A stretch of 64,000 nt of DNA from Perna viridis. Lineage: Eukaryota. The stretch's first letter is position 1. Each line of letters starts with the position of its first letter. The notes under the pieces were generated by a model, which did no database searches, was not told where the DNA came from, and saw nothing but the letters and a program-made list of their open reading frames with translations. The stretch covers positions 38,446,862 through 38,510,861 of the forward strand of contig CM074511.1 of assembly GCA_037379345.1 (NCBI GenBank). Reading direction: 5' to 3'. The position numbers and the translations under genes are program-made. Below, piece after piece: positions 44,191 through 48,100 of the stretch.

Positions 44191-45177
44191 GCATTGAAAG
44201 TTAAAATTTTCAAAATTCCTAGAGGACTGTACTACTTTAAATAATTATAAGCTAACAATAATTAAAAATAACATTCTAAATGGATGTATGGCAACTAACA
44301 AAAATGTATAAAACATAAAATCTAAAGCCATCCTTGAATTTCTGAGTTTGGCCAAACAAGACAGGTGGTCAAATGAAATAAGAACTTGAGGTTCACTGGA
44401 TCAATTAATGGAGATCAAGATACTTCGTACAATCTGGGCCAAGTTGTTCAAAACTTAGTCCGCTGGATAAATATTTATCCACTGGATAACTTGCACAGGT
44501 TACACTAGACTTATCCATGTCCTTAATCTTCAATTACTCATCATTTGCAAAATTGGCACTTTCTATCTACTTTTTCTGTATAAGATGAGTCTTTGTAATT
44601 GCTGTGCGATTCTTTATCAACATTTATAAAGTGGTCTTTAACCATCATCATTGTTCTGACAAAAATATAATTTTGAAGAGATGTTTATTTTTGTATTGTC
44701 ACATTGACTGCATTGATCTTTAATTCTTAATATAAATTGTTTTAAATAATGTTCTATTTCAGAATTTCAGAAACCTAAAGTTTTGTTGTAATATATCCTT
44801 AACCAAGGATCCCTCTAAGCTTAATACATGTTCCAAATATTTAACACAAGAAATTAAAATTCTACCTTTCATAGGAATTTGTCCCAGTAATTAAGTATTA
44901 CTGCACAGTTCCTCTGTGGTAAAATTATGTCCACCGATAAATAACTTACATAATATACTTATTTTTTTTATATTTTAACAATTTCATGGATTTTTTTTTC
45001 ATAGCTACCTGCCACTTCGATTTTAAATATGTACCTAGTCTACTGCATAATCTACAGGAACGCAATTACAGTTATACCCGTGACTACATTGCAATATCGA
45101 ACGCTCCTTGTTATATTCTCTTTCGGAAGAGTTCTAGACTTATTCTACCAATCGAACAAAACGACTAAAAGATCGAA

Positions 45178-48100
45178 ATGGCGCAACCAGACGAAGGGAG
45201 TTTCTACATTGAACTTTGTAAAAATCCAATAAGATTCGACCCAGTGGATAAAGTGACCAATGTATTTTACGATGATGCGAACAAACAGGTAAATTATGGT
45301 AATTCAATGGATAATCAATAATGGAAAGGATCACAGACACTGTCACTGACACTGCCACTGCGGCACTGGTCAACATTATTGATATTATGGTCAACACAGA
45401 TCCTGTCCAGTCACTCTGCTGACTGGCATTGCTGTGGCTGTGTATCATGCTTGTGTTTTGACCTGTACCAGCTACTCCAACAAAATTTATGTGGAGAAAA
45501 ACAGCAATTTGGCAATTTTTGAAGAACCAATTTAGAATGATTAAGATTTTGTGGTGCATTTGGCTTGTTATGTGTCGTTTTTAATTTTGAATACATATAC
45601 ACTTACTTTATTCAGAGTTTAAAAATAAAACCATGAATACATAGACATTTTAAATTTTGTGTGAAAAAGCTAATTTCTGTGTTTTTGTATGTAATTATCA
45701 TAACTTAGTCAGTTAGTGGTCAATGTGCAGTAACTCCATATATATATATATATATATATATATAATGAGGAGGAATGACCTGGCCAGCGAAAGCTATATT
45801 TTATATAGCCTAGCTTGCCGAGTGGTCTAGGGCACTGGACTTAGTGCAGTCGGTGTTGCCATAGATGTCACAGCGGTACGAGTTCGAGTCCCTCGGAGGG
45901 AACGACCAAAAATTTGCTTCGCAAATTTGACACTTCTAACATGGTTGGGAATTTTTCAGACCCTTCTATAAGTTTACGTTATCTTCCCTGTATCACTTTG
46001 ATCCGATGCAGCAGTGTAGCGAATAGAGTCATCACATTCTGAGACGTTGTATAATATTGATTTGTTGTGACATGCATCATTAATTTGATCCTCTATCCTA
46101 CATAATAACACCTAGATAAACTGTCCCGTACTACCATAAATCGTGTTCTAAGTTACGGCCCTAGATTAACCTTACAAGGAGGAATGACCTGGCTAGCGAA
46201 AGCTATATTTTATATAGTCTAGCTGGCCGAGTGGTCAAGGGCACTGGACTTAGTGGAGACGGTGTTGCCACAGATGTCACAACGGTAAGAGTTCGAGTCC
46301 CTCGGAGGGAACGACCAAAAATTTGCTTCGCAAATTTGACAGTCCTAACATGGTTGGGAATTTTTCAGACCCTTTTATAAGTTTTACATTATCTTCCCTG
46401 TATCAATTTGATCCGATGGAGCATTGCAGCGAAGAGAGTCGTCGTGATGCAAATTTTTGGTCGTTCCATCGCGGGACTCGAACTTGAACTAACGATGTAT
46501 TAATATATTAATATGTTATATACATGTTCATACACACTCTGTTTATTTAAGGCACTGAAGAAGGTCATTTGTTGACTGAAAATTTTGCTCATTATATATT
46601 TTATTATAGTGTACTAACATCTTTATTGGTATCGTTGTACAATCCTTTAGACTTGTATAATTTTTTTGTTGGTGCTGTATCGTCATGACTTGTCGATCCA
46701 ATACCCATATTAAGTTTGCTGGTTGGCAGATTCCTTTAGACTTTATATATATTTTATACAAAATTTTTTTTTCCATTGGAGTACTTACTTGTACTAGGTA
46801 TATTGTAGTCCAATTGGTTCCTGTTTTTGTAGTTTTTGAGATTTGAGAAGCTTTATTGACAAATACGTGGAGCAAAACTGACTGAGAGTTAACCATGATA
46901 ATATTTCACATCTCTGTCAGTCTCCAACAACCTTTCCATATATTATTACATGCATTGTAATGTTAAAGGTAGTTATATTTAAAGTTGATTTTTGATTGAT
47001 ATAAATATTTACAAGTCTACAATCATATATCATATATGCTCTGGGAAGTTTTAATTTTATGGCCATGGTTGCTGCCTATATACTCTCTTGTAGGATTCGG
47101 TGTCCTCATTGGGCAGATAAATCAGAAAATATGTTGAAAACTGAATCCCAAAAGGGATTAGCTGACTGTATTGATTAAAGAAACCCAAGTGCTTGCTAAA
47201 TGGTCTGAATCTATGTATTTTATTCTTATGGAATCAATTTATTTCAATAACAGGTCTTCACTGTACGCTCCGGTGGTGCAATGGGTGTTGTTGTTAAAGG
47301 ACCAAAGGATATCAACTCCATGACATTCAGGTATATCGTTATAAGAACATATCTAGAACTACTGGCTAGGTTGGGTTTGAGAAAGAAAGAAAAACAGTGA
47401 TTGTAACATAAAATGTTAATTTTTTTTTATGATTTGTGCCTTGATGTAGTTATTCATAAACATTTTTTATCTGTAGACCAAAATATTTATACCATCAGCT
47501 TGAAAAGTGGGATGTATATACTGGCCATGCTGCCCTTCCATTTGTTGTTAGTGCTTAACTCAAATTTACAACTCCTCTCAAGGCCATTGAGCTATTGCCA
47601 TCACTTGGCATCCATCGTCGTCGTCATCATTAAAAATTTTTCAAAACTCTTCTCCTCTGACACTGCTTGACCAATTTGAACCAAACTTGCTATGAATGTT
47701 CCTTTGGGTATCCTTCATAGAACTGTTGTGGGGATTTTTGATCTGTTAAAAACCTGGCCACCGTTACTAAAAATAGAACATGGGGGCCAGACAGTAGCTT
47801 TTCGCATATATCTCCAAAACCGTTAGGTTTAGCTAAATTCTGAAATGGGTAAAAGTGTTCAGCATGATGAGATCTATCTGTGGTCAAATTTTCATTTTAA
47901 TCTGTTAAGCCATGTTTGAGTTGTTGCCCTTTTTCAATATTTTTTGCTATTTTTTATGTTATTTCTTTCAAAAATCTTCTCTTCTGACACTACTCGACCA
48001 ATTGGAAAGAAACTTGGTATGAATGTTCCTTAGGGTATCCTGCATAGAACTGATGTGGAGATTTTTGATCTGTGGAAAAACATGGCTGCCATTACTAAAA

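What the first reader, a model, noticed from the sequence alone, without database searches (positions are those of the whole stretch)
45768..46444. Pol III-type 409-bp tandem repeat with a twister-ribozyme-like fold at the monomer junction (candidate twister retrozyme/SINE)
Seen: a 409-bp unit in ~1.7 tandem copies next to (TA)n, each with A- and B-boxes. Across the junction (46077-46187) the RNA reads UCAU-UAA-UUUG-AU-[~50 nt]-UCGU-GUUCUAAGUU-ACGG-[16 nt]-CAAG-GAG-GA-AUGA. Known: twister ribozymes have the order P1-UAA-P2-GC..P4 with a 10-nt loop GUCCNAAGCC..P2'-GAR-GG-P1'. Here both pseudoknots differ from that pattern in compensatory fashion (CC/GG to UC/GA; GC/GC to AU/GU). Known animal retrozymes are similar-sized tandem repeats that use hammerheads to release monomers and circRNA. 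Inference: this may be a twister-processed non-autonomous retroelement. Caveats: the stems are short and G-U rich, the insert is long, and a T5 run could stop Pol III before the ribozyme.
Basis: partly seen in the sequence, partly recalled or inferred. Interest (0 to 1): 0.8.

Follow-up and report, generated by a model that had tools for sequence, protein, structure and literature searches.

The report
tRNA-headed Penelope-style repeat, no twister ribozyme
The 409-bp repeat is one copy of an abundant non-coding mobile element with a tRNA-like promoter that inserts into (TA)n microsatellites in the way Penelope-like retroelements do, and the proposed twister ribozyme is a chance look-alike found only in this decayed copy.

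Summary
The sequence features are real. There are two direct copies 409 bp apart (1.65 units) beside (TA)13, each with A- and B-box-like motifs, and the quoted twister-like string sits exactly at 46077-46187.

- Rfam gives no twister, hammerhead or other ribozyme match at E<=10, for this copy or for three consensus-like units.
- The same model does find canonical twisters elsewhere in this genome (E about 1e-10).
- In 29 distinct family copies, the key P4 and T1 pairs are mismatches in 26-27. The window copy looks twister-like only through private substitutions.
- There is no covariation, and the region folds worse than shuffled sequence.

The element belongs to a family with about 2,800 linker and 5,600 head motif matches. 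[quoted passage not shown]
- 3' ends are fixed at two internal TATAA sites that run into (TA)n.
- 5' ends vary.
- Partial tandems are seamless, with a 408-bp period.
- Inverted fragments often abut the 5' end.
- Copies nest with PLEs, and a PLE 3' fragment lies 40 bp away in this window.

It is most likely a Pol III-headed non-autonomous PLE partner, retrozyme-like but with no detectable ribozyme. First-stage notes flagged what appears to be the same family on other DNA of this genome.

The parts
45738..45764 (.). (TA)13.5 microsatellite abutting the 5' end of the insertion; the target or flank type of the whole family
   Evidence: TRF. Family copies are flanked by (TA)n.
45765..46176 (+). Full 409-bp unit, taken as unit positions 1-409 for the family
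   Evidence: It is 91-95% identical to full-length copies on at least 15 contigs.
46177..46444 (+). Second, partial unit (unit positions 1-266). It is atypical because it does not reach the usual 3' ends at positions 203 or 290.
46446..46484 (-). Inverted fragment of the head (about unit positions 114-153) abutting the partial unit
   Evidence: Inverted repeats I1-I3; blast
45779..45825 (+). Strong hairpin with a T-rich loop. Its 3' arm is the A box. Family 5' ends cluster in its loop at unit positions 28-37.
   Evidence: -20.5 kcal/mol, z -3.3 in the window copy; -27 kcal/mol, z -5.6 in a consensus-like copy. 5' ends.
45815..45891 (+). tRNA-like head of copy 1, with A-box-like 45815-45825 and B-box-like 45881-45891, followed by ...ACGACCA. 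Copy 2 has its boxes at 46224-46234 and 46290-46300.
   Evidence: Sequence; box conservation. No tRNA call by ARAGORN or by Rfam at E<=10.
45952..45956 (+). T5 run, a possible Pol III terminator inside the unit
   Evidence: Sequence
45966..45971 (+). Internal CTATAA, where 21 of 45 family insertions end and run into (TA)n (3' end class '203')
46050..46056 (+). Internal GTATAAT, where 17 of 45 family insertions end and run into (TA)n (3' end class '290')
46077..46187 (+). It is present, but private to this copy and not a ribozyme by any test run.
46120..46167 (+). Part of the linker that is complementary to the tRNA-like head (45828-45887). It is probably an old inverted partial copy of the head and contains the supposed P4/L4.
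   Evidence: Fold of the whole unit, z -3.4. Local alignment score 35 against a null of 20.9 +/- 3.7.
46527..46755 (+). 5'-truncated 3' end of a Penelope-like element ('PLE-B': RT plus C-terminal GIY-YIG). It ends at its own TATA site in TA-rich DNA.
   Evidence: Blast to L061 3' UTR (94%) and to the L069 pLTR (90%). Pfam on the 897-aa ORF.

Best explanation
Window 45765-46484 is one insertion, rearranged at its 3' side, of a roughly 408-bp-periodic non-coding retroelement family. Each unit has four parts:
- a degenerate class-II tRNA-like head with Pol III A and B boxes;
- a body with two internal TATAA sites;
- a linker that is partly the inverted complement of the head;
- a strong hairpin with a T-rich loop just upstream of the A box.

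The family is most likely mobilised in trans by Penelope-like elements (PLEs) of this genome. The proposed steps are as follows.
1. The PLE endonuclease nicks a (TA)n microsatellite.
2. The TA-ended DNA primes reverse transcription at an internal UAUAA site of the RNA, at unit position 203 or 290.
3. The cDNA runs to the RNA 5' end, or stops early.
4. The reverse transcriptase often continues on a second template, end to end or around a multimer or circle. This gives seamless partial tandems, the analogue of PLE pseudo-LTRs.
5. It sometimes leaves an inverted fragment at the 5' side.

Shown here: the insertion anatomy, the copy numbers, the nesting with PLEs, and the absence of any known ribozyme.

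Inferred: RNA-mediated transposition, PLE dependence, Pol III transcription starting at about unit position 30-36, and the nature of the multi-unit template.

No self-cleaving ribozyme is involved, as far as any test here can tell.
For: - Abundance: 2,780 matches to a linker 29-mer and 5,626 to a head 23-mer, on both strands, with zero control matches. Full-length copies lie on contigs C1-C15.
- 3' ends: of 45 insertions of at least 240 bp, 38 end at unit position about 203 (21) or about 290 (17), both at internal TATAA, running into (TA)n.
- 5' ends: these vary, with clusters at positions 28-37 (10 of 45, 6-15 nt upstream of the tRNA-like +1) and 327-362. Monomers spanning 28/36 to 290 also exist.
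- Tandems: 1.2-3.7 seamless units per insertion, none longer.
- Inverted fragments: 12 of 45 insertions have an inverted family fragment abutting the 5' end.
- Nesting with PLEs: 13 of 30 loci centred on PLE GIY-YIG domains carry a family copy within 1.5 kb, often sharing one (TA)n.
- PLEs here end in (TA)n.
- PLE-B shows the same behaviour. It has two alternative 3' ends at AGAC-N-TATA(A) sites, and seamless tandem junctions with a roughly 30-nt tail. The family's two end sites share the GAC-N(3-5)-TATAA motif.
- Literature: these are the published hallmarks of PLEs. They include 5' truncation, partial tandems, an adjacent inverted 5' copy, microsatellite targets with (TA)n for Naiads, and non-autonomous head-to-tail derivatives (PMC8557442; PMC8969392). 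PLE reverse transcription starts at internal RNA sites (PMC11167929).
- One locus (L061) joins unit positions 28-290 directly to a full-length PLE-B 5' start.
Against: - No autonomous PLE with extended 3' sequence similarity to the unit was found. Only the short GAC-N-TATAA motif is shared. Local alignment of the unit to the PLE-B 3' UTR is at chance level. blastn against 30 PLE loci found only inserted family copies.
- The chimeric unit/PLE-B junction is unique in the genome, so it may be a nested insertion.
- Co-location could reflect a shared preference for (TA)n without shared machinery.
- Multi-unit Pol III transcripts would have to read through T5/T6 runs in every unit.
- The tRNA-like head is not recognised by ARAGORN or by the Rfam tRNA model.
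- The RNA evidence is contigs from runs whose RNA status is only a guess. They include genomic flanks and cannot show RNA ends.
Confidence: 0.65

Rival explanations
1. One reading: a twister ribozyme spanning the unit junction (cleavage at U46081/A46082) cuts multimeric transcripts into 409-nt monomers that circularise, making this a twister retrozyme.
For: The motif string is present as described. A descriptor built from it is rare in shuffles, at about 0.005 per window. The family has retrozyme-like size and tandem form. Real twisters do exist in this genome.
Against: - No Rfam twister, twister-sister or other ribozyme hit at E<=10 in the window copy or in three consensus-like units. The same model scores real twisters in this genome at 50-57 bits.
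- In the family, P4 pair 71-86 is C.A in 26 of 29 distinct copies, and T1 pair 76-112 is A.A in 27 of 29. The P1 C-G pair is broken in 8 of 29.
- There is no covariation: 450 of 500 shuffles score at least as high.
- The descriptor matches none of the roughly 60 other junctions in 229 kb of family loci.
- The region folds worse than its shuffles.
- The real twisters here keep the canonical GCC, GUCNCAAGCC and GAG-G, which this string lacks.
Confidence: 0.02
2. An ordinary LINE-dependent tRNA-derived SINE with a (TA)n tail. The tandems arise later by unequal recombination, or by repeated insertion into the tails of earlier copies.
For: Pol III boxes are present. There is a fixed 3' end with a simple-repeat tail. 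Tandem-like SINE arrays are reported in bivalves (PMC11481361). Some adjacent copies are separate insertions, for example 1-203 + TAA + 36-290 in L007.
Against: - Most copies are seamless at more than one unit, with the linker (positions 291-408 and 1-27) present only inside tandems. Repeated insertion of 255-bp monomers cannot produce this.
- There are two alternative internal 3' ends.
- Inverted 5' fragments are frequent.
- No LINE partner was seen.
- The strong physical association is with PLEs.
Confidence: 0.12
3. DNA-level spread: extrachromosomal circular or rolling-circle copies of a 408-bp repeat, or a Helitron-type carrier, integrate into (TA)n through TA microhomology.
For: Both junctions tend to fall at TA-rich places in the unit. 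Copies longer than one unit with any phase are what a circular donor gives. The target is an AT dinucleotide repeat.
Against: - There is a strong polarity. The 3' ends fall at only two sites while the 5' ends are many. A symmetric microhomology process would not give this.
- A 5' cluster at the expected Pol III start sometimes lacks TA microhomology (L024, L061, L057).
- There are no Helitron ends or hairpin, and no conserved carrier sequence outside the unit.
Confidence: 0.1
4. A ribozyme-free retrozyme-like cycle. Unit-length RNA, defined by the Pol III start and T-run or by tRNA-processing enzymes, circularises and is copied by rolling-circle reverse transcription.
For: The periodicity is seamless, with up to 3.7 units. 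The whole unit folds into a compact, largely paired structure, z -3.4. The start cluster at positions 28-37 coincides with the T5-6 run in the hairpin loop, so a transcript running from one start to the next T-run would be exactly one unit long. Mussel retrozymes of 350-390 nt are abundant circRNAs (PMC7229834).
Against: There is no evidence of circles. Contigs cannot show ends, and the tandem DNA explains every 'goes back' joint. No known ligation route fits Pol III ends. End-to-end template jumps explain the same pattern without circles.
Confidence: 0.1

Closest known systems
Non-autonomous derivatives of Penelope-like elements, including animal non-LTR retrozymes (Cervera & de la Pena 2020, PMC7229834; Li et al. 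2026 preprint 10.64898/2026.07.22.740005) and non-autonomous Chlamys elements such as MRC1 (Craig et al. 2021, PMC8557442)
   Same: Non-coding. Unit of 150-450 bp, low GC (42%). Dispersed as short head-to-tail arrays. 5' truncation, inverted 5' fragments and a microsatellite target. Found in a genome rich in PLEs.
   Different: No hammerhead or other known ribozyme. Carries a tRNA-like Pol III promoter. No extended similarity to a PLE 3' end or pLTR was found.
Schistosome Sm-alpha/Sj-alpha SINE-like elements (Ferbeyre et al. 1998, as described in PMC6765202 and PMC2770079)
   Same: tRNA-like head with apparent Pol III transcription. Unit of about 330-400 bp. Occurs in repeats and dispersed. 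The idea of multimeric transcripts.
   Different: Sm-alpha has an active hammerhead that releases monomers; none is detectable here. (TA)n targeting and Penelope-style anatomy are not described for Sm-alpha in the papers read.
Twister ribozymes (Rfam RF03160 and the permuted types)
   Same: The order of short motifs in the window copy (P1-UAA-P2...hairpin with NNNNNAAGNN loop...P2'-GAR-NN-P1').
   Different: Lacks the conserved GCC, GUCCNAAGCC and GAGGG letters. The stems are 4-bp and G-U rich. There are 51-nt and 16-nt inserts without stems. No CM score, no conservation in the family, no thermodynamic support. Real twisters in this genome look canonical.
tRNA-derived SINEs of bivalves (PMC11481361, PMC4758252)
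   Same: tRNA-like head with A and B boxes, a simple-repeat tail, and occasional tandem and palindromic arrangements.
   Different: No LINE-derived tail or partner was identified. The tandem form is the rule rather than the exception. There are internal alternative 3' ends and (TA)n targeting.

Membership tests
Twister ribozyme | Significant match to the Rfam twister covariance models (P1, P3, P5) or twister-sister | tested here: not met
   No hit at E<=10 in window 44500-47500 or in L009:1050-2560. Positive control: RF03160 finds at least 19 sites elsewhere in the genome at up to 57.5 bits.
Twister ribozyme | Conserved core letters and pseudoknots T1/T2 with P1-P2-P4, kept across related copies | tested here: not met
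   The consensus loop is GUACUAAGUU. The T1 pair is A.A in 27 of 29 copies and the P4 pair is C.A in 26 of 29. There is no covariation.
Twister ribozyme | Site-specific Mg2+-dependent self-cleavage | not testable with these tools
   Needs in vitro transcription of 46060-46200 and of a consensus dimer.
Animal non-LTR retrozyme | Short tandem repeats of 150-450 bp, low GC, dispersed in many loci | tested here: met
   408-bp period, 42% GC, thousands of loci.
Animal non-LTR retrozyme | A self-cleaving ribozyme (type I hammerhead) in every unit | tested here: not met
   No Rfam ribozyme at E<=10. No CUGANGA core on either strand.
Animal non-LTR retrozyme | Unit-length circular RNA | not testable with these tools
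   Only contigs of probable RNA runs were available, and they cannot show ends or circles on tandem DNA.
Non-autonomous Penelope-like element | Fixed 3' end, frequent 5' truncation, partial tandems (pLTR-like), adjacent inverted 5' copy | tested here: met
   38 of 45 insertions end at two sites. 5' ends vary. Insertions span 1.2-3.7 units. 12 of 45 have an inverted 5' fragment.
Non-autonomous Penelope-like element | Microsatellite insertion bias shared with resident PLEs | tested here: met
   (TA)n lies at the flanks. PLEs here end in (TA)n. 13 of 30 PLE loci carry a family copy.
Non-autonomous Penelope-like element | Sequence similarity to the 3' end or pLTR of an autonomous PLE | tested here: inconclusive
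   Only a short shared GAC-N(2-5)-TATA(A) motif at the end sites. No extended similarity. Only 30 of at least 486 GIY-YIG candidates were sampled.
tRNA-derived SINE | Internal Pol III promoter (A and B boxes) in a tRNA-related head | tested here: inconclusive
   The boxes are present and conserved, and by eye the head resembles a class-II tRNA. But there is no tRNA call by ARAGORN or Rfam, and transcription was not tested.
tRNA-derived SINE | LINE-derived 3' tail or LINE partner, with monomeric insertions | tested here: not met
   No LINE similarity was seen. The tandem form predominates.

The most novel reading that the evidence does not exclude
The family is a so far undescribed class of Pol III-driven, tRNA-headed 'SINE' that depends on Penelope-like elements instead of LINEs. 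Unit-length RNAs would run from a start at about unit position 30-36 to the T-run at the same place in the next unit. They would be copied from internal UAUAA sites primed by nicked (TA)n, and joined end to end, or copied as circles. This would give retrozyme-like tandems without any ribozyme.
Probability: 0.3. Interest if true: 0.65.

Novelty: new variant of a known kind. Interest (0 to 1): 0.35.

Why it matters
As a ribozyme candidate the finding is negative. It shows how a decayed repeat copy can mimic a relaxed twister descriptor, and that the family consensus settles the matter.

The element underneath is more interesting. Non-autonomous PLE partners known so far are hammerhead-bearing retrozymes or internally deleted PLEs, and SINEs are defined by their dependence on LINEs. 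A tRNA-headed element with about 2,800 linker and 5,600 head motif matches and full Penelope-style anatomy at (TA)n would extend both categories. It would also offer a short, abundant substrate for studying how PLE reverse transcriptases choose internal initiation sites and build tandems.

Tried and rejected
- Hammerhead reading of the hairpin region (GAAA plus hairpin plus CUA). The strands flanking it pair with each other, and there is no CUGANGA on either strand. Rejected.
- tRNA gene. ARAGORN and the Rfam tRNA model find nothing.
- Helitron carrier. No conserved sequence lies outside the unit, there are no Helitron ends, and the 5' ends vary.
- The unit as a regular 5' module of PLE-B. In L061 the unit directly precedes the PLE-B ORF, but nine other PLE-B 5' regions instead show PLE-B's own tandem junction there. 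The chimeric junction pattern is unique in the genome.
- Extended similarity of the unit to the PLE-B 3' UTR. It is at chance level: score 22 against a null of 21.2 +/- 2.2.
- Rfam ribozymes in the PLE-B pLTR region. None at E<=1.
- RF00163 whole-genome search. Nothing was scored, and the tool itself flags the answer as uninformative.
- RNA evidence. Four runs guessed to be RNA cover the family heavily and the unique flanks not at all. But they are contigs, include genomic (TA)n junctions, and show no molecule ends. This leaves the element's own transcription and any circular RNA open.
- Species. The genome size (723 Mb) and 15 large contigs made me think of a mytilid mussel, but I did not verify this and nothing rests on it (only listed papers).
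Full report
**1. What is in the sequence**

Window 45768-46035 and 46177-46444 are direct copies (89-94% identical) with a start-to-start spacing of 409-410 bp. The 141 bp between them (46036-46176) occurs only once, so the locus holds 1.65 units, and Tandem Repeats Finder reports only the (TA)13.5 at 45738-45764. An inverted 39-nt fragment of the same unit follows at 46446-46484.

Each copy has A-box-like and B-box-like motifs.

**2. The twister reading fails**

- *No covariance-model hit.* Rfam cmscan with permissive filters and E<=10 finds no twister, twister-sister, hammerhead, HDV-like, pistol, hatchet or hairpin ribozyme. This holds for window 44500-47500 and for three consensus-like tandem units (L009:1050-2560). 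The blank is meaningful. A whole-genome search with RF03160 finds at least 19 full-length matches elsewhere (up to 57.5 bits, E about 1e-10), with canonical UAA, GCC, GUCNCAAGCC and GAG-G.
  - The P4 pair at columns 71-86 is C.A in 26 of 29 distinct rows. Only the window copy has C-G.
  - The T1 pair at columns 76-112 is A.A in 27 of 29.
  - The P1 C-G pair is broken in 8 of 29.
  - No measure exceeds the shuffles (450 of 500 shuffles are at least as high).
  - The family consensus reads GUACUAAGUU / ACAG / CGAG, where the window copy has GUUCUAAGUU / ACGG / CAAG. The twister-like look comes from private substitutions in a decayed copy.
- *No thermodynamic support.* The 121-nt region folds less well than its dinucleotide shuffles (z +2.1 for the window copy, +1.2 for two consensus-like copies). 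The MFE is not the proposed fold.
It hits no other place in 229 kb of family-rich loci, which hold about 60 other junctions. It hits about 0.005 times per shuffled 64-kb window. That makes roughly 50 chance hits in a 723-Mb genome.
- *No hammerhead core.* There is no CUGANGA on either strand.

**3. Where the look-alike comes from**

The supposed P4/L4 lies in a stretch (unit positions 353-400, window 46120-46167) that is complementary to the tRNA-like head (unit positions 61-120). CUAAG is the complement of the CUUAG in the anticodon-loop-like part of the head. The two stretches pair in the fold of the whole 411-nt unit. That fold is much more stable than shuffles (-120.7 against -101.3 +/- 5.7 kcal/mol, z -3.4). 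The inverted similarity scores 35 against a null of 20.9 +/- 3.7. The linker therefore probably contains an old inverted partial copy of the head.

**4. What the element is**

The unit is a dispersed family.
- A linker 29-mer matches 2,780 times and a head 23-mer 5,626 times (up to 2 mismatches, both strands, zero control matches).
- Full-length copies at 91-95% identity lie on contigs C1-C15.

I mapped the unit on 63 fetched loci. Of 45 insertions of at least 240 bp:
- 38 end at unit position about 203 (21) or about 290 (17). Both are internal TATAA sites, after which the sequence runs into (TA)n.
- The 5' ends vary. There is a cluster at positions 28-37 (10 of 45), inside the T-rich loop of a strong hairpin (z -5.6) and 6-15 nt upstream of the tRNA-like +1. 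There is a second, broader cluster at positions 327-362.
- Insertions span 1.2-3.7 seamless units. Simple monomers (28/36 to 290, about 255 bp) also exist.
- 12 of 45 have an inverted family fragment abutting the 5' end.

The A box TGGCCGAGTGG is exact in 54 of 69 heads. AGTTCGAGTCC is present in 50 of 69. However, neither ARAGORN nor the Rfam tRNA model recognises the head.

**5. Link to Penelope-like elements**

This anatomy matches the published description of PLE insertions: heavy 5' truncation, partial tandems forming pseudo-LTRs, an adjacent inverted 5'-truncated copy, microsatellite targets ((TA)n for Naiads), and non-autonomous head-to-tail derivatives (PMC8557442; PMC8969392). PLE reverse transcription has been shown to start at internal RNA sites (PMC11167929).

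In this genome:
- A Pfam GIY-YIG search gives at least 486 candidates.
- 13 of the 30 fetched loci carry a copy of the 408-bp family within 1.5 kb, often tail to tail on one (TA)n.
- PLEs with a C-terminal endonuclease end in (TA)n 170-450 bp after the domain.
- One family, called PLE-B here (897-aa ORF, RT then GIY-YIG), has two alternative 3' ends at AGAC-N-TATA(A) sites. It also has seamless tandem junctions with a roughly 30-nt tail. The 408-bp family's two end sites carry the same short GAC-N(3-5)-TATAA motif.
- A 5'-truncated PLE-B 3' end lies in the window itself at 46527-46755, 40 bp from the element.

I could not find extended similarity between the unit and any sampled PLE 3' end. 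A direct unit/PLE-B junction in L061 is unique in the genome. The partner is therefore inferred, not shown.

**6. Mechanism proposed (inferred)**

1. Pol III starts at about unit position 30-36.
2. In a tandem master copy the next T-run lies at the same unit position, so transcripts could be exactly one unit long if the internal T5 is read through.
3. A PLE nicks (TA)n.
4. The TA end primes at UAUAA (position 203 or 290).
5. cDNA synthesis to the RNA 5' end gives the 255-bp or 170-bp monomers.
6. Continuation on a second RNA, end to end, or on a multimer or circle, gives the seamless tandems.

Rivals are a LINE-dependent SINE, DNA-level circular integration, and a circular-RNA cycle. They are listed with their evidence in the Rival explanations section.

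**7. RNA data**

Twenty runs from eight studies hold the family. None is on record as RNA, and several are only guessed to be RNA. I laid four such runs on window 45300-47000. Contigs cover the family and the PLE fragment, and the unique flanks are at zero. But contigs run into genomic (TA)n junctions, and no molecule ends can be seen. This is compatible with transcription, including intronic read-through. It says nothing about cleavage or circles.

**8. Comparison and novelty**

The element works like an animal retrozyme or a schistosome Sm-alpha element: a tandem, non-coding unit with a Pol III-like head. It fails the defining ribozyme feature of both. It also fails the LINE-tail feature of SINEs. 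It meets the structural features of a non-autonomous PLE derivative, except for demonstrated 3' similarity to an autonomous element.

I found no paper describing a tRNA-headed PLE partner. I therefore rate it a new variant of a known kind, with modest confidence.

First-stage notes on other windows of this genome describe what appears to be the same family in the same terms. I reached the PLE reading, before seeing those notes.

Noticed in passing
window 46527-46755 (+): A 5'-truncated 3' end of a Penelope-like element (PLE-B: RT plus C-terminal GIY-YIG). It ends at its own TATA site in TA-rich DNA, 40 bp from the 408-bp element. Contigs of probable RNA runs cover it.
   Followed up: yes
L064-L068 (e.g. 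L065:1501-1560 and 1076-1137; L064:1501-1561 minus): Canonical-looking twister-P1 matches: 50-57 bits, E 1e-8 to 1e-10, below the Rfam gathering score of 67.2. There are at least 19 sites in the genome. They sit just after A-rich tracts at the 5' head of SINE-like repeats of about 240-330 bp (L065 and L067 are 91% identical over 240 nt). L065 has two twisters 425 nt apart and a tRNA (67.7 bits) 280 nt downstream. They are unrelated to the 408-bp unit.
   Followed up: partly
L061:8921-9177 (minus) next to ORF 8896-6206: Unit positions 28-290 of the 408-bp family are joined through TA directly to the 5' start of a full-length PLE-B with an intact 897-aa ORF. This junction pattern is unique in the genome, so it is either a template-switch chimera or a nested insertion.
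   Followed up: yes
L069, L070, L071 (PLE-B pLTR and 5' regions): PLE-B tandem junctions are seamless. A tail of about 30 nt lies between the usual genomic 3' end (…GACTTTATATA) and the 5' start (TTTTTACGCG…). No Rfam hammerhead or other ribozyme is found there at E<=1, although canonical C-terminal-EN PLEs usually carry one.
   Followed up: partly
L035, L037, L040, L056 (about 90 nt before the (TA)n 3' end): A second PLE family ('A') has a hammerhead-like CUGAAGA…GAAA motif near its 3' end. This was seen by eye and not checked with a model.
   Followed up: no
G000:C6:47136030-47151672 (L062): Four head-to-tail copies, at about 5.1-kb spacing, of an element with a 628-aa GIY-YIG-containing ORF and a 274-aa ORF.
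   Followed up: no
window 47142-47161 (-): A weak CRISPR-DR25 match (23 bits, E 0.21). It is a short hairpin and a chance match in a eukaryotic window.
   Followed up: no
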